Source of the DNA: Podarcis filfolensis
Lineage: Eukaryota
Strand: one strand, 5' to 3'
Assembly: GCA_964270895.1 (NCBI GenBank)
Contig: OZ185453.1
DNA: 64,000 bases
Part shown: positions 9,372 through 64,000 of the stretch, piece by piece
Layout: each line of letters starts with the position of its first letter
Numbering within the stretch: the stretch's first letter is position 1
Position numbers and translations under genes: made by a program
The notes under the pieces: generated by a model
Databases searched by the model: none
The model's input: only the letters and a program-made list of their open reading frames with translations
Told to the model about the DNA's origin: nothing

Positions 9372-10034
9372 CAAGGTGGCAGTGGAAGCTACAGTGTACA
9401 GAACCATTCTTGCCTGTCCCCAGAGAAGGAAGAGACATGTAGTGGTGGCAGGTGATGCCCTACAGATGGGGACAGAGGCAGCAGTGTGCAGAAGAATGAC
9501 TCATGCTTTCAGTTGTCTCTACACAAATGCACAGAATATGGGAAACAAGCAAGAAGAACTTGAGCTCTTAATACAGAATTGCAACTATAATCTAATAGAC
9601 ATTACTGAAACCTGGTGGGATGAGGCTCGTAATTGGAATGTAGAAATTGAGGGGTACAACCTGCTCAAAAGGAACAGATCAGTCAGGAAGGGAGGAGCAG
9701 CAGCATTGTATGTAAGGGATGTGCACACTTGTAAATGGAAACTGGAGCAAGCTCGTTTTCTCCTACTCTGGAGGGTAGGACCAAAACCACAGGATTCAAG
9801 TTACAAGAAAGGAGATTCTGACTAAACATCAGGAAGAACATTCTGACAATAAAAGCTGTTTGGCACAGAGTGGAACAGACTCCCATAGGAGGTGGTGGAC
9901 TCTTTCCTTGGAGGTTTTTAAGCAGAGACTGGATAGTCACCTGTCATATATGATCTAATTAATATTCCTAAATTGCAGGGGCTTGGAGTAGATGACCCTT
10001 GGGATCCCTTCCAACTCTATAATTCTATGAATTC
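9372..10034 (+). mobile_element. Internally deleted CR1 LINE (ORF1 fragment, ORF2 endonuclease start, 3' end)
   Basis: KRHVVVAGDALQMGTEAAVCR (CR1 ORF1 esterase start) joined to FSCLYTNAQNMGNKQEELE..DITETWWD (APE endonuclease), then a jump near 9735 to the CR1 3' end with ATTCTATG tail. Confidence 0.88.
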
Positions 10035-43690: not shown

Positions 43691-46461
43691 GCAAGTCAGG
43701 TACACTGAATGAGAAAAACAAAACCCCTAAAGTTCACTGCTCCAAGTAAACTCTGTGGATTTCCAAGTTTAATTATTACGACTCCTCAACTGTCAAAGTT
43801 AAACTGGCCTTCCTGAAGAGAAATGAACATGATGATTGGGCTAATCGTGGATCTAGAAACAGGTTGCAAGGTAAGAAAGCCTGTAATATTGGCACACTGA
43901 ATGAAGCAAAGATGGTGAGAGATTGCGGGCATGTGGAATGATATGGGTATACAAATTTATTCTCAGAACAAAACAGCAAGTGCTGAGAATGACCCGACAC
44001 AACTGCATGTCAGTAAGCGCTATTATAAATGCACATCTTCTGCATAAAAAGACCTTCCAACATCCAGAAGCCGAGCATGACATTATACCCAGAGCTTCAA
44101 GGAAGTGTCGCTACCATGGATTGCTGAACACCAGAAGGCTGTATAAGGTGCTGCCACAGCTTATTCACCAGTCAGCATTTAAAGTACTGATTGATTTAGC
44201 TTTGTCTTGTTTCTATGAATACACAAAGCCCCTTTCTCCAGCACACATCCAATAATACACCTTGGTTTCATGCAGTTGACACATGCTCTAAACTAACCCA
44301 AGCTGGATGGCATCTGGTTGGCCACTGTGAGAACAGAGTGCTGGACTCTGGGCCACAAGGATTCCTCTTATGTTCTAATATGGCCTGAGATCCAGGAATC
44401 AAGTACCATGTCACTTGCCAGGTCTTTTGGAGACAAGCAACACTTACAAATTTATCAACAGTCACTGCAAGCAAATGTTGAATGTTAAAGTGAAGAACTG
44501 GGTTTCAATGAAGTGGAGGCCACAGCCTATTTGAGACTACAAAGACTTGTAAGCAATAGATCATAGCAAACAAATAGGATGGTAAGGGTATTGTTTGCAA
44601 GCCTCACCAAGCATTGTTTGAGGGGAGGGAATAGGCAGAGTCTTGCCAGCAGTGTGTATATTACTACTAAACTTTTATATGTGGTGGCCCTGCATCATTG
44701 CTCAGAGTTTATACAGGGAAGCCTTGACAGACAGACTATGTCACCTGGACAGACACTATAAAAGAATGTACTTGAATTAGCAGCTGTACATTTGCTAATC
44801 AGTATCAGCCGAGAACACTCACTCAATGCTTTTTGTTATTTTACGCTTCTATATACAAAGCTGGAAAATGAAAAATTGTTGGTTATTTTGCTGAAAGTAA
44901 GAAGTCTATCTATGGAACCAATTTGACAGTGCTTATCTAGGAGAAACTGGCGTTGGTTTGTATTGCTTTGAGGATTAAGAAGATTTTTGGCACTGCTACT
45001 AAAACTACAGTAACTGGTTTGTTAATTTTTTACTTCCTTGATCATTGCATCTATATTGTGTGGTGATGCAACATCAGCAGATTTGCCTGAGGAGCAATTT
45101 CAGCAAAAGGGCTCTAAAATTGCTTTTGATCAAGTCGTGGTTCTGGTCACCTAAAGTTTATTATTCCTTGATCAGCTTAACCAGAGCAGGAGCAGCATAA
45201 AAGACCAGTCTTAATTTCTAAGGGAAAAATGCTATGCCTCAAGCCTGTTTCCAAACAGTCATTTCTAATCTAGGGCCACTAGGGCCATTCTTGATGTGTG
45301 CAGTGTCTGAAGGAAATGAACTCTAAACCAACAGACAATGAGGCTGCAGCTTAGTGAGCTCTGGCACAAATTAAGCCCCGGCAGAGACTTCATGCAATTG
45401 AGATCCACATGATGACCAGTTTATGAATACTACTGCACACGCCAAAATGTGGAGCTGCCACCACATGGAACCACTGTCACCGTCTGACATCTTTTAATTG
45501 CTTCAACTAATTCCTGGCTTCTTCCAGAGAACAGCCTGCTCTTTTAAGCTAAAGTAAAATGTTTCATCAGAAAAACCAGTTAAGGCAGAGTGGCCTCTGT
45601 CCTACAAAGAAACTAAGCATTCTGTAACAACATAGCCCAAGTTCCACAACCCCAAAAGCTGAACTTTGCAATTGGTGTAAATTCTGGAACCCAAGCAAAT
45701 CAGCAGGGTTTGTTTTGCATAATCATGCAGTTTAAATGTTGAAGCATAAATTATTCTGCTTCTGAAAATCATATGGAATAGCCAAGAGCTAAAACAGAAT
45801 GTTAAAGCTCTGTTCCCCAGAAACGTTATCCTAGCCCTTCTGATTTGAGGTTTTACCCTCAAAACGTTTCTTTAAACCATAAAATTGTTGCTGCTCTCCC
45901 AACTCCACCCCAGTCAGTGAAATCAAATAAAAAGCTGAGATTCTTAGGAAACAGAATTCTTCAGCTGTATTCTACAGGTTTCCCAAGCTCCCACAAAATA
46001 GCAACAAGTGGAAATCATGCTATAGAGTGATAGTCCCAACATGAACTGTGAAAGTATGCCTGTTCTATAGATATGATTTATTCCTTCTTACTTTTTTACT
46101 TTGGATTTCTTAAATATAGTTCTACAACTCCATCCAGGTGACAGAGTCTTGAGACACTGGCCCTTCTCTGGCAATACACTAAAATTATGCACATGACCAC
46201 AACGAATGCTGGGAGAGGTGCAGAGGTCCTCTGCCAAGCTACACTTCTCAAAAAGCTATCTCCAATTAAAGGGCTTCTTAGCCCTTCAAAAATAAGACCT
46301 GTTAGCTGTAATGACACAGTCAACAGGAACGTCTAGCAGATGCATTTTGGGGTGGGAGTAGGAGTTAAAGAGTAGGATTTCCAGAAGCTTGTGTGTACTT
46401 CCAACTTGATGGCAGTGATAATTACCTTCTGGAAAGGGAAATGTTGTATTCTCCTCCTTAC

Positions 46462-46638
46462 CAATATGGATTTGCAGACTCCAGCCACAGCTTGGCAGGC
46501 TGCTGAGGTGGGGAAGTCTATAGGCAGGTTGGGCAGGCCCAAGATGGTGACTAGGGGCAGCAGGCCCTTCTGATTCACAAACTCCTGACAATGGTCATCT
46601 GTTGTATTGTTGCTGAGGATGGACTCCACAAATTTCAT
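46462..46638 (-). CDS. HUWE1: HUWE1 exon 13 ([11 protein letters not shown]...GVCKSIL)
   Basis: ctcag| / |gtaagg, 177 nt. Confidence 0.96.
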
Positions 46639-47287: not shown

Positions 47288-47564
47288 CAGGGGTCAGCAA
47301 CTTAAGGCCCATGGGTTGGAAGTGGCCCGCGGAGGTTGTTTGACCGGCCCATGAGTTGCCGCCAAACTTAGCTGCCCGCTCACGTGCTGCGCTAAACTGG
47401 CGCAGCGCGGGGACTCGCTTCCGCGGCGCTGAATACTGCGTCTGCACATGCGCAGATGCCGAAAATCATGGGGGCGCATGCTCACACGGGCACACGATCC
47501 GGCCCACAGAGGGATCTCCACAGGACCAATCTGGCCCAGGCAAGTTAAACCTTGCTGACCCCTG
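47288..47564. mobile_element. hAT (Charlie-type) MITE
   Basis: TIRs CAGGGGTCAGCAA / TTGCTGACCCCTG; 8-bp TSD ccctaaac / ccctagac (7/8). Confidence 0.9.
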
Positions 47565-49887: not shown

Positions 49888-50956
49888 GGCTAGGTAAATA
49901 AGACAGTTTCACAGTCCATGGTTTGAAGTTGGCTGGTTTACACAGAACAAATTTTTAAAAATCACAATCTCTGATTTATATGTAATAAGTCAGGTTTTGT
50001 GGAAGTGAAACTAAACCCTGTAGGTGTCCTCTGAGGTGAGAGGAAGAACACAAGCCCAAGGCTCACAGCAGCTCCTTCCTGTCATGTTTTAGTCTTACAT
50101 GAGAACATGGACAATCTGAAAGCCCAGTGGTGGGAATAAGCAGGTTTATCAAGGTTTGAAAAGATCCAGCCAAGTTGTGGTTCTTGGTAAGTTATAATTT
50201 GGGAGTTTCTCCAAAGCAATGAATACTCTGTGTTGATGCATTTTTAAGAAAGCACTTGCAGCTAAGTTTGGTCATCTGACCAATCAAAAAAAGATTTGGT
50301 CAACTGACCAAATAGTGGTTAACTTTGAAAGAATTAACTTTAATTAGAACAAAAACAGAAAGATAAACATGTTTGATATTTGTACTAATTACAAAAACAA
50401 AATAATCTGTTAATGAAATCATAAAGTTACTACCATATTTAAAACAAAAAGAACTGTAATGAATTATAACTTTCAATCACTTGAAATGTGAATTCACTGA
50501 ACTGTTCTCTAGCTTTTATCCCGAACACCAGGGTCAGTCTATGACTACATAATGAAATAAAATCCCAAATAAAGTATAGCAACAGCAACCAACTAAAAAG
50601 TTTTAAATGCAGTTGTGCTAATTAGGCAGCTAGTAGGTTCAACCATTGTGGCTTGATGAGGTATGTGATTGTGGTCAAATGATAACAGATAGCAAATTTA
50701 TAATGTCTGATCTGTCAATTGACTGGCATGCCAACCCTACCCATAAGCTCACAAAAGCCAATTTCTCCTAGTCACAAGCCAACAGAATAATGAGCACATT
50801 CCCCAGAGAAAAATTAAGCCTGCCAGGAGAGCAGGAAGATTACACATGCACAGCATAGAATGGAACTGAGAGGAGTAAATTAAATATTCCCACCCACTCT
50901 CACTTGCAAGTGAATTTCTCTGAAAGCCAGTGGTGCTTACTTCCGAGTAAAATGTA

Positions 50957-51784
50957 TGTAAGGCAGGAAATAGGTAAGTGAAGAATCAGCTTGCAGAAAC
51001 AAGAAAGAAAAGCTAACAGTACCACTTTGACTGAAACCCACCTCTGGGTTCTGCTGTGGTCCAAGTGATCTTTATAACAGCTTCACCCACCTCTTTCCTT
51101 AGAATTGTGCTTTGTATAATACAGGGGTAGGCAACCTAAGGCCCGGGGGCCAGATGCCGCCCAATCGCCTTCTCAAGGCGTGCGGATGGTCCGGGAATCA
51201 GCGTGTTTTTACATGAGTAGAATGTGTCCTTTTATTTAAAATGCATCTCTGGGTTATTTGTGGGGCATAGGAATTTGTTCATTTTTTTCTTCAAAATATA
51301 GTCCGGCACACCACATGGTCTGAAGGACGGTGGACCGGCCCATGGCTAAAAAAGGTTGATGACCCCTGGTGTAATATATCACTTCAATCACATCTCAGGG
51401 CTATAAATCCAGCAGAGCCCACTCTACCATTCACTGGCTGTGTTATGTTCACTGCCTAGAAACTCTGTTCATTGTGTAGCACTGTAAACCTACTAAATAA
51501 ACAAATGCAAACCATGAATATAAGGCATTATTTGTGAATCTGTGGCCTGCTTCAATACCAAACAGGTATTAAATGTCAGCAACCTTGTATTGAAGGGTAA
51601 ATATCACAATAATGCTAAACAGTAAAATGACCATGGTCTTATCCTGTCTTGATTCAAAACCATAAGGCAGGCATGAACAGCAAGACACTGAATGAGGAGG
51701 TGGGTTTCAGTCAAAGTGGTACTGTTAGCTTTTCTTTCTTGTTTCTGCAAGCTGATTCTTCACTTACCTATTTCCTGCCTTACA
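50957..51784. repeat. Perfect 88-bp inverted repeat (50957-51044 / 51697-51784), 652-bp spacer
   Basis: Base-by-base reverse-complement identity; the second copy is flanked by the direct repeat agacactgaa (51683-51692 / 51784-51793). Confidence 0.93.
51122..51368. mobile_element. hAT (Charlie/OposCharlie1-like) MITE
   Basis: TIRs CAGGGGTAGGCAACC / GGTTGATGACCCCTG; TSD gtataata / gtgtaata (7/8); 247 bp. Confidence 0.88.
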
Positions 51785-52523
51785 GACACTGAAACAAATG
51801 CACCATTTCTCAAACAGTCTCTACCAAAAATGCTCAAAGGAATCAAACTTTACTCTTATGAAGGGCTTTTTTCTTTTTTGCAACAGTACACTTCACTAAA
51901 TGAACTCAACAGTTGCCTCAAATTCTGCTTTTCCCTCAATGTAGTGATCATAGCACACAGGAAAATGCATGCTTTGCTAACACACGAAGAGCTATGCAAA
52001 TGCATTTTCTGCTGTGTACAATGCACTTGCCAGTCAACATGGGTAACAGCTGCCCAAGTACATTTTCTGCTATATGCAGCAACCTTGACAGTTATGTGAA
52101 GCACGTTGACCAGGATCCAGAGAGTTGCTTAGGCTTACTCAGAGAGCCTCTGCTAATCCAGTGGGATGTATCTTTTGTATAGCTTACCCATCCCAACACA
52201 CCCCGTGCTGGCACCAGCTGCTCTGAAACGCTCCGTTTCAAAACTAATTGCCAAGTGGCATGTTGGATTGCCACTGAAGAAAAACAAGACCCCATTAGAT
52301 TCATGGAATTAACTTCATGGGTTCTCTGAACCATCACCATGCTCTTCCTAAACATGAAGGACAGCCCAGTTGTTTTGCCAAGCCCCCCCCCCCCCCGGCC
52401 CTCAAATACAGGTTGTTTTCAAGCAGCTTTAAAAACTGATCAGAAAGCAAGTGCAGGCTAGACTTTGCAGCAAGCCACCATTCACAGGATTGCTGTATGT
52501 TATTTTTAGCCTCAGCTACTCAC

Positions 52524-52735
52524 TGCTGGCTGGATTCTGCCTCACTCTGCTGCGTGGCATTGAAACTCTGCATAGCTTGCACCTCTTCTTCTTCTTCATC
52601 CTCACTAGAGGCCTCCTCTGCTGCATGAGTTGAGCGAGGTGGGGGAGCAGTGGCTGTTCCATCAGCCTTTTGAATGGAGGGCTTCTGGCAGATGTATTTA
52701 GGGTCTCGGCCCAGATTGCAGATTTCTTCTAGTAA
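52524..52735 (-). CDS. HUWE1: HUWE1 exon 11 ([12 protein letters not shown]...EAESSQ)
   Basis: tgcag| / |gtgagt, 212 nt. Confidence 0.96.
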
Positions 52736-52937
52736 CTGCAGAACAGTGAACAAGCATGTTGGCATGGAACAAGTTCTGGTTAGGACTTCCAGAATACCAG
52801 TCTGCTATGTTATTCTCCAAATAAGACTGCATTCAGGAAAAAACAGTGTAAAAGAGACAACTTCTAGGTGCACAACTTGGGAGGCTGGCAAGATAGAGAC
52901 ACAAACAGCATAGGAACCATTCAGGTCTACTTCCTAC

Positions 52938-63346: not shown

Positions 63347-63698
63347 AGTAGTTAAGTAGGAAAGAAGCTTACAGCCAACTTAAACTTATCTCATTGACAA
63401 TATTGTGGTGGGAGTGGGAATAGATCTTATCTAGATTCGGGGGGTGGGGAGAGATCACAGATTAAGGTTGTATCTTAAGATACTGCTGCTTTTATATATA
63501 AAGGTGGCACTATGACACGTAGTACCTTTTTGCCAGGTATAACCAGTTATGCCTTCTCTGTAGGAGCAGCAGAGATCTGCGCTATGGTAATTTCCATATT
63601 ATATTACTGTAATATATTCAGTTTGGGGCTACCCTTGAAAGCTGTTCATAAACTTCAGTTAGTGCAGCAGCTAAGCTAGTGGCTGGGACTGACTATTG

Positions 63699-63834
63699 CA
63701 GGCATAGGCAAACTCGGCCCTCCAGATGTTTTGGGACTACAACTCCCATCATCCCTAGCTAGCAGGACCAGTGATCAGGGATGATGGGAGTTGTAGTCCC
63801 AAAACATCTGGAGGGCCGAGTTTGCCTATGCCTG
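63699..63834. mobile_element. Palindromic hAT MITE
   Basis: 58-bp perfect inverted arms, 20-nt loop, perfect 8-bp TSD gactattg. Confidence 0.95.
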
Positions 63835-64000
63835 GACTATTGGAATCATCTCCTTGGTACCTAAAGATCTCAGCTGGTTACCGGTTAGTCTCTGGGAAAT
63901 AAGTCAAGACTTGATAGCACTAACTCATCCGGGTCTAAATACTGATATATAGAGAGGACAGGCTGACATGTCCAGGGCCAAGTCTTTTTTCAGCAATGGT

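What the first reader, a model, noticed from the sequence alone, without database searches (positions are those of the whole stretch)
50957..51793. Perfect 88-bp inverted copy of unique intron sequence inserted 650 bp away with a 10-bp TSD: candidate locally templated insertion
Seen: 50957-51044 and 51697-51784 are exact reverse complements and resemble no repeat I recognise. The second copy is flanked by agacactgaa on both sides (51683-51692, 51784-51793), has 4 untemplated bases (tgag) at its left end and no polyA. At its right end the target (taca-gacac) partly matches the source continuation (taca-tacat). On the plus strand the insert equals HUWE1 pre-mRNA sense sequence. Known: TPRT yields TSDs and primes at the insert's 3' end, LINE RTs of tail-repeat type prime by microhomology, and Pol theta end joining also makes local templated inserts. 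Inference: nascent HUWE1 intron RNA (or nearby DNA) was copied into its own locus very recently, creating an 88-bp perfect dsRNA stem in the pre-mRNA.
Basis: partly seen in the sequence, partly recalled or inferred. Interest (0 to 1): 0.8.

Follow-up and report, generated by a model that had tools for sequence, protein, structure and literature searches.

The report
Lineage-specific inverted templated insertion in HUWE1 intron
One lizard lineage copied about 90 bases of a HUWE1 intron backwards into a spot 650 bases away, most likely a DNA repair or replication template-switch scar; this kind of mutation is already known, so the case is well documented but not a new mechanism.

Summary
50957-51044 and 51697-51784 are exact reverse complements, and no other copy exists in the window.

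- **Not an artefact.** Contigs from two other samples of the best-matching organism (A) carry the insertion. The shared 93-nt unitig has twice the flank depth, so there are exactly two copies.
- **Not transposon ends.** Two related organisms (B, G; about 1.3-1.5% diverged) have contigs that run through the left arm and bridge 51687 to 51782 without the right arm. The left arm is therefore the source and the right arm a lineage-specific insertion.
- **The 10-bp "TSD" is not clean.** B and G have 17 letters where a clean empty site would have 5. About 94 nt (CTGAA + TGAG + the copy) replace 5 letters, and only AGACA of the left repeat is ancestral.
- **TPRT is disfavoured.** There is no poly(A) and no LINE cleavage motif. 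The right junction has 3 nt of exact microhomology (6 of 7).
- **Two alleles exist.** The A samples carry a second allele with a perfect 93-nt repeat.

Best reading: microhomology-primed template switching at a break or stalled fork, of the TSM / MMBIR / foldback type. An RNA template cannot be excluded. The scan has unchecked notes of similar perfect inverted duplications elsewhere in this genome. Interest is moderate to low.

The parts
50957..51044 (.). Source (template) arm: ancestral, single-copy intron sequence. In the second allele the matching stretch is 50953-51045 (93 nt).
   Evidence: Exact reverse complement of 51697-51784. Contigs of organisms B and G run straight through it at flank depth (records 24 and 9). 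In organism A the unitig 50953-51045 has depth 175 against 88 for the flank (record 2).
51697..51784 (.). Inserted inverted copy of the source. Its last 3 nt (ACA, 51782-51784) are also present at the empty site, so they count as junction microhomology.
   Evidence: Absent from the bridging contigs of B and G, which join 51687 to 51782 (table 5, records 30 and 15).
51688..51696 (+). Junction filler created in the same event: CTGAA (a direct copy of 51789-51793, following the shared AGACA) plus TGAG with no template found. The last base is A instead of G in samples X1 and X3.
   Evidence: These letters lie inside the 94 nt missing from B and G. 51696 G>A is seen in X1 and X3 (table 3). A search for 7- to 9-mers within +/-3.5 kb found no convincing template for TGAG.
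51683..51687 (+). AGACA: the only ancestral part of the left copy of the 10-bp direct repeat, and the likely microhomology that primed copying of CTGAA.
   Evidence: The left pieces of the B and G contigs end exactly at 51687 (table 8).
51784..51793 (+). Right copy of AGACACTGAA: ancestral target sequence. 51782-51788 (ACAGACA) matches the continuation of the source (ACATACA) at 6 of 7 positions.
   Evidence: The right pieces of the B and G contigs start at 51782. Outward extension check.
51122..51369 (.). Very high-copy MITE-like repeat in the spacer. It is older than the insertion and not part of the event.
   Evidence: Summed contig depth of 1e5-1e7 in all four runs. B and G contigs enter it from both sides. 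A second, diverged copy starts at 47288.

Best explanation
This is a one-off mutational scar, not a mobile element. On the lineage leading to organism A, a DNA end at about 51687-51782 in the HUWE1 intron was extended on the wrong template. The end was either a double-strand break end or a stalled nascent strand.

A 3' end paired through short microhomology with single-copy sequence 650-830 bp away on the same chromosome. The pairing is ACA/TGT exact, or ACAGACA against ACATACA at 6 of 7. About 88 nt were copied in inverted orientation, and the strand then returned to the original locus. The other junction was closed untidily: 5 nt (CTGAA) were copied from across the break using the AGACA microhomology, 4 nt (TGAG) were added without a recognisable template, and 5 original letters were lost.

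This is the signature of microhomology-primed template switching. The relevant named mechanisms are template-switch mutation, MMBIR/FoSTeS, and foldback or snap-back synthesis with alternative end joining.

A second allele in organism A has a perfect 93-nt repeat (50953-51045 against 51696-51788). I read it as a later extension and homogenisation of the arms by a second template switch or conversion, because the window allele still carries the ancestral G at 51785.

**Shown:** the copy, its polarity (source versus insert), its absence in two relatives, its two-copy status, the junction sequences and the 51696 variant.

**Inferred:** the order of synthesis steps, the enzyme, the T at 51785 in the second allele, and which allele is older.

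The consequence is an 88-93-bp perfect stem with a 652-nt loop in the pre-mRNA. It is probably neutral, and a likely ADAR substrate (untested).
For: - **Repeat.** Exact 88-nt inverted repeat, unique in the window.
- **Empty site in B and G.** Contigs of B (record 30, 2690 nt) and G (record 15, 2505 nt) bridge 51687 to 51782, with 255 and 118 letters on the shorter side and 5 letters between. Records 24 and 9 run through the left arm at single-copy depth.
- **Insertion in A.** In X1 the unitigs end at 50982, 50953-51045, 51016, 51725 and 51759, exactly as a k=31 graph breaks at a 93-nt exact two-copy repeat. Depth is 175.2 against 88. X3, an independent sample, has a contig running from 51470 to 51788 through the whole insert. 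No empty-allele joint appears in X1 or X3.
- **Microhomology.** 3 nt exact and 6/7 extended at the right junction. CTGAA follows AGACA at both places.
- **Literature.**
  - Template switching creates perfect inverted repeats in one step, with inferred events up to 59-83 bases (PMC8794818, PMC10710096).
  - Germline MMBIR-type inverted templated insertions of 25 bp or more, some with several templates, are common human variants (PMC8421209).
  - Foldback insertions of 2 to about 150 bp form at breaks, with one end primed at microhomology and the other captured by end joining (PMC11724301).
  - Complex insertions arise from repeated rounds of synthesis (PMC2943611).
  - Template switching between imperfect arms homogenises and expands inverted repeats (PMC13100816).
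Against: - The template is 652 bp away. Described snap-back and MMB-TI events mostly use templates within tens to about 100 bp, although that limit is partly set by the search tools.
- The left junction shows essentially no microhomology with the source (0-1 nt), and TGAG has no identified template.
- The five letters at the empty site were not printed by the tool. B and G cannot be rooted against A with three taxa, so a clean empty site in the true ancestor plus a separate 12-nt change in a B+G stem is not excluded.
- The evidence is from assembled contigs, not raw reads.
- Nothing in the sequence tells a DNA template from an RNA template.
Confidence: 0.72

Rival explanations
1. RNA-templated patch. 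The nascent HUWE1 intron transcript, or an R-loop at the source, served as template for a reverse-transcribing polymerase at a break. The polymerase could be Pol theta or a LINE RT acting without its endonuclease. The product would resemble a class 2 templated sequence insertion.
For: - The geometry fits. The minus-strand 3' end ...CAGTGTCTGT can pair with ACAUACA of the sense RNA and be extended into exactly the observed minus strand of the insert.
- The junction features match class 2 TSIPs: microdeletion, microhomology and non-templated bases (PMC5110952).
- The nascent transcript is by definition present in cis.
Against: - Intron sequence is identical in RNA and DNA, so there is no positive evidence for RNA.
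- Described RNA-derived patches come from distant loci rather than 650 bp away (PMC5110952).
- Local inverted copies are the standard product of DNA template switching (PMC8421209, PMC10710096).
- Extension of the arms into both source flanks in the second allele is most simply a DNA-level event.
Confidence: 0.15
2. Canonical target-primed reverse transcription by a LINE (L1, CR1, L2 or RTE type) on intron RNA, producing a true 10-bp target-site duplication.
For: A perfect 10-bp direct repeat flanks the insert in the window allele. The lizard genome carries LINE remnants, such as the endonuclease-like ORF at 9376-9825.
Against: - The empty-site contigs do not show a single AGACACTGAA. Five letters are replaced, and half of the left repeat is new.
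- There is no poly(A) or microsatellite tail.
- The nick site is not T-rich (…GTGTCTGT/AAGG).
- There are 4 filler bases.
- In the second allele the repeat is only 9/10.
- Of the class 1 TSIP criteria (PMC5110952), only the TSD is even apparently met.
Confidence: 0.04
3. The two arms are terminal inverted repeats of an ~830-bp DNA transposon.
For: Inverted identical ends about 830 bp apart, with a MITE inside.
Against: - B and G have the left arm and the spacer but not the right arm.
- The arm is exactly two-copy in organism A, with depth 2x the flank.
- No direct repeat flanks the whole unit.
- There are no other copies in the window.
Confidence: 0.01
4. Assembly artefact in the window's genome assembly.
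For: None beyond the general suspicion that attaches to perfect repeats.
Against: Two other samples, from two studies, contain the junction-specific contigs. X3 has one contig through the whole insert and both junctions on its left side (record 22).
Confidence: 0.01

Closest known systems
Template-switch mutations (TSMs; Loytynoja and co-workers: PMC8794818, PMC10710096)
   Same: A single event writes a reverse-complement copy of nearby sequence and creates a perfect hairpin-forming inverted repeat. It is lineage-specific, lies in an intron, and is seen by comparison with relatives.
   Different: - Here the copy is 88-93 nt and the template is 652 bp away. Reported TSMs are mostly 6 to a few tens of bases, with the largest inferred at 59-83, and form short-loop hairpins.
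- This is a net insertion with filler rather than a roughly length-neutral replacement.
MMBIR-type templated insertions (MMB-TI; PMC8421209) / FoSTeS
   Same: An inverted copy of a cis template, microhomology at a junction, a compound junction with a second short template (CTGAA), and presence as a germline variant.
   Different: The MMBSearch definition requires a template within 100 bp. One junction here lacks microhomology.
Foldback / snap-back templated insertions at double-strand breaks (PMC11724301, PMC2943611; Pol theta stem-loop extension PMC11292364)
   Same: One end is primed on microhomology. [quoted passage not shown] Sizes up to about 150 bp are reported.
   Different: The usual loop is tens of nucleotides and the usual insert under 35 bp. 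Here the loop would be about 650 nt. No enzyme can be assigned from sequence.
Templated sequence insertion polymorphisms, class 2 (PMC5110952)
   Same: A patch at a break with microdeletion, microhomology and non-templated bases, and without poly(A).
   Different: Class 2 TSIPs derive from distant loci through RNA. Here the template is local, and an RNA origin is unproven.

Membership tests
Template-switch / MMBIR-type templated insertion | The insert is a reverse-complement copy of sequence nearby on the same chromosome. | tested here: met
   88/88 identity, 652 bp apart.
Template-switch / MMBIR-type templated insertion | The template stays in place (copied, not moved), and the event is derived relative to related genomes. 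| tested here: met
   The left arm is present in all four runs. The right arm is absent from the bridging contigs of B and G. Unitig depth is 2x in A.
Template-switch / MMBIR-type templated insertion | Microhomology at the switch points. | tested here: inconclusive
   Right junction: ACA exact, 6/7 extended. Left junction: 0-1 nt and 4 untemplated bases.
Template-switch / MMBIR-type templated insertion | Template within about 100 bp. This is the operational criterion of MMBSearch (PMC8421209). | tested here: not met
   The distance is 652 bp.
LINE TPRT insertion (class 1 TSIP) | Target-site duplication of a sequence present once at the empty site. | tested here: not met
   The B and G contigs have 5 unaligned letters plus roughly ACAGACACTGAA between AGACA and ACAAATG, and 94 nt replace 5. 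Caveat: the polarity of this difference rests on parsimony.
LINE TPRT insertion (class 1 TSIP) | Poly(A) or LINE-type 3' tail, and a T-rich endonuclease site. | tested here: not met
   No tail at either end. The junctions read CTGAA/TGAG and TGTCTGT/AAGG.
TIR DNA transposon / MITE | Multiple genomic copies carrying both ends, with a TSD flanking the whole unit. | tested here: not met
   The arm is exactly two-copy in A. The left arm and spacer exist without the right arm in B and G. No flanking repeat surrounds the unit.
Class 2 TSIP (RNA-derived patch) | The template is RNA from a distant locus. | not testable with these tools
   Unspliced intron sequence is the same in RNA and DNA, and the source is local.

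The most novel reading that the evidence does not exclude
The template was the gene's own nascent intron RNA, or the strand displaced in an R-loop. In that case this would be a germline-fixed, in-cis, transcript-templated repair event in a vertebrate. The several perfect local inverted duplications noted elsewhere in this lizard genome would then reflect an unusually active pathway of this kind.
Probability: 0.13. Interest if true: 0.7.

Novelty: new member of a known kind. Interest (0 to 1): 0.33.

Why it matters
This is a clean natural example of how a perfect, long (88-93 bp) RNA-duplex-forming inverted repeat appears in one step inside a highly conserved, broadly expressed gene. The empty site survives in relatives, and two allelic stages are visible: the original form and an extended, perfected form.

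It lies at the long and distant end of what template switching is known to produce, with a template 652 bp away. It also shows that a convincing-looking 10-bp "TSD" can be built by microhomology-primed copying rather than by a staggered cut. That is a caution for calling retro-insertions from flanking repeats alone.

It does not reveal a new mechanism. No functional effect is shown.

Tried and rejected
1. **Fetching orthologous contigs to read the five empty-site letters.** An exact look-up of the ORF spanning the insert found nothing. A homologue search with the neighbouring HUWE1 exon ORF, followed by four contig look-ups, returned only distant species. These were 77-90% DNA identity in exons with no alignable intron, so the route failed. 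I ran no further search on an intronic ORF, because the first showed that the close relatives' contigs are not in that protein index.
2. **A template for the TGAG/TGAA filler.** I searched 7- to 9-mers within +/-3.5 kb and found only chance-level hits. One weak lead remains: ACCCACCTCT occurs twice (51036 and 51085), and the second site would explain one extra base in the second allele.
3. **Transposon-end reading.** Rejected.
4. **Excision footprint of the neighbouring MITE.** Rejected. The MITE is shared with B and G and lies more than 300 bp from the site.
5. **A-to-I editing test.** Not possible. The RNA runs found belong to organisms G and H; G lacks the insert and H was not tested.

Full report
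**Observation.** The stretch 50957-51044 is the exact reverse complement of 51697-51784 (88/88). With one mismatch at 51785, the match runs to 92 nt (50953-51044 / 51697-51788). AGACACTGAA occurs only at 51683 and 51784 in the whole window. TGAG sits between the left repeat and the copy, and there is no A-tract. No 14-mer of the arm occurs elsewhere in the window. A window-wide scan for inverted repeats within 5 kb finds only this pair, one palindromic MITE and one weak pair.

HUWE1 lies on the minus strand. The HECT and other HUWE1 ORFs are on that strand, and the ORF at 52523-52765(-) hits proteins that sources name HUWE1. The site is intronic, between coding ORFs at 46333-46638 and 52520-52765. 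The minus-strand RNA of 50900-51850 is predicted to fold with the complete stem (-367.7 kcal/mol, z = -16).

**Evidence from other genomes.** One search found public runs of eight coded organisms that hold this intron. I laid the contigs of four runs on 50700-52050: two samples of the best holder (organism A: X1, X3) and one each of organisms B (X4) and G (X12).

Counting the listed substitutions over about 980 unique bases gives these divergences from the window:

| Run | Organism | Divergence |
|---|---|---|
| X4 | B | about 1.5% |
| X12 | G | about 1.3% |
| X1, X3 | A | 0.1-0.3% |

*Result 1: B and G lack the right arm.* In B and G a single contig bridges 51687 to 51782 ("skips 94, 5 letters between"). 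The shorter sides are 255 and 118 letters (records 30 and 15). Other contigs run straight through the left arm at flank depth (records 24, 9). So the left arm, the 652-bp spacer and its high-copy MITE are older, and only the right arm with its junction bases is new in the A lineage. This excludes the transposon-end reading.

*Result 2: organism A has the insertion.* The X1 unitigs end at 50982, span 50953-51045, restart at 51016, end at 51725 and restart at 51759. A k=31 graph does exactly this at an exact two-copy 93-nt repeat. The repeat unitig has depth 175.2 against 88 for its flank. X3, a different sample and study, has one contig running from 51470 through the entire insert to 51788. No empty-allele joint is reported for X1 or X3. 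This excludes an assembly artefact and shows exactly two copies.

**The flanking repeat is not a clean TSD.** The gapless coordinates of the bridging contigs fix what lies at the empty site. B and G have 17 letters between AGACA (51683-51687) and ACAAATG (51794 onward): 5 unaligned letters, then letters aligned to ACAGACACTGAA (51782-51793). A clean empty site would have 5 (CTGAA). So about 94 nt (CTGAA, TGAG and 85 nt of copy) replace 5 letters. Only AGACA of the left repeat and ACA at the right end of the copy pre-exist.

CTGAA following AGACA at both places is best read as 5 nt copied from the other side of the break after AGACA microhomology pairing. That is how synthesis-dependent end joining builds direct repeats (PMC2943611).

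Two caveats apply:
- The tool did not print the five letters.
- With three taxa I cannot root the tree. A clean ancestral site plus an independent 12-nt change in a B+G stem remains possible. I give it about 15% on parsimony.

**Two alleles.** X1 and X3 read A at 51696 (listed, table 3). Their unitig ends also require T at 51785, because otherwise the repeat unitig would start at 50957, not 50953. This T is inferred, not printed. Their repeat is thus a perfect 93-mer (50953-51045 / 51696-51788).

The window allele differs at exactly the two ends of the arm. At 51785 it keeps the G that B and G also have. The most economical history is the window-type insertion first, followed by one further templated event that copied the source again across both ends. 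Template switching is known to homogenise and extend imperfect inverted repeats (PMC13100816; the quasi-palindrome correction recalled in PMC10710096). The reverse order needs two point changes at the arm ends, one of them restoring the ancestral base by chance.

**Mechanism.** Two geometries fit the sequence.

- **(a) Foldback from the left end.** The plus-strand 3' end of the left break end acquires CTGAA+TGAG. It then folds back on its own resected strand and copies 51044 down to 50957. It is captured by the right end through ACA (6/7 with ACAGACA).
- **(b) Priming from the right end.** The minus-strand 3' end ...CAGTGTCTGT of the right end, or of a stalled nascent strand, pairs with the complement of TGTATGT at 50953-50959. 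It copies up to 51044 and is then joined untidily to the left end.

Both are microhomology-primed template switches, as described for the following:
- TSMs (PMC8794818, PMC10710096);
- germline MMBIR-type insertions, including multi-template ones (PMC8421209);
- foldback insertions of 2 to about 150 bp with hybrid end capture (PMC11724301).

In geometry (b) the template strand has the same sequence as the HUWE1 pre-mRNA. But nothing in the sequence distinguishes RNA from DNA.

Canonical LINE TPRT is disfavoured for four reasons: no tail, no T-rich nick site, loss of target bases, and filler.

**Age.** The event is younger than the split from B and G. It is old enough to be in all three A-type genomes and to have a derived allele. 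If it were as old as that split, I would expect about 1.3 differences between the arms (2 x 88 x 0.0075). The chance of seeing none is then about 0.27. Perfect identity is therefore only weak evidence of extreme youth.

**Comparison and verdict.** This is a new member of a known kind: a template-switch, MMBIR or foldback templated inverted insertion. It is unusual in length (88-93 nt) and template distance (652 bp), and it is well documented by an empty site and two allelic stages. Earlier unchecked notes of this scan list other perfect inverted duplications in the same genome. A census of these would be the way to learn whether this lizard is prone to such events and whether transcription matters. 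Functional effects (ADAR editing, a new sense-strand splice donor) are predictions only.

There are no N runs in the window.

Noticed in passing
window 51766-51801 (minus strand): In HUWE1 sense orientation the inserted copy supplies a near-consensus 5' splice site, UAG|GUAAGU (donor GU at 51767-51766). It lies 21 nt downstream of a pre-existing acceptor-like uuuguuucag (AG ending at 51789). Together they outline a possible 21-nt cryptic microexon at 51768-51788. The donor would be buried in the 88-bp stem once the left arm is transcribed. No RNA evidence is available for organism A.
   Followed up: no
window 63694-63839: An almost perfect palindrome: 63-nt arms, 97% complementary, 20-nt loop. 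It has the look of a palindromic MITE (…ggactacaactcccatcatccc…).
   Followed up: partly
window 51122-51369 and 47288: A MITE-like element with CAGGGGT…ACCCCTG ends. Summed contig depth is 1e5-1e7 in all four organisms' runs, so it is a very abundant family shared across the clade. A diverged copy starts at 47288.
   Followed up: partly
window 51000 (organism B contig): Organism B has an extra AAGA inside the source arm, in the AAGAAAGAAAAG tract. This is a small slippage difference. It shows the source region evolves independently in relatives.
   Followed up: no
window 51036-51045 and 51085-51094: ACCCACCTCT occurs twice, 49 bp apart. One copy is exactly at the inner end of the source arm. 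The second copy's next base would explain one more base (51695) of the junction in the 93-nt allele. This hints that copying may have started at the second site and realigned. The evidence is weak (one base).
   Followed up: partly
window 9376-9825: An ORF with a LINE endonuclease-like N-terminus (…ITETWWDE…), so a retrotransposon remnant sits in another HUWE1 intron.
   Followed up: no
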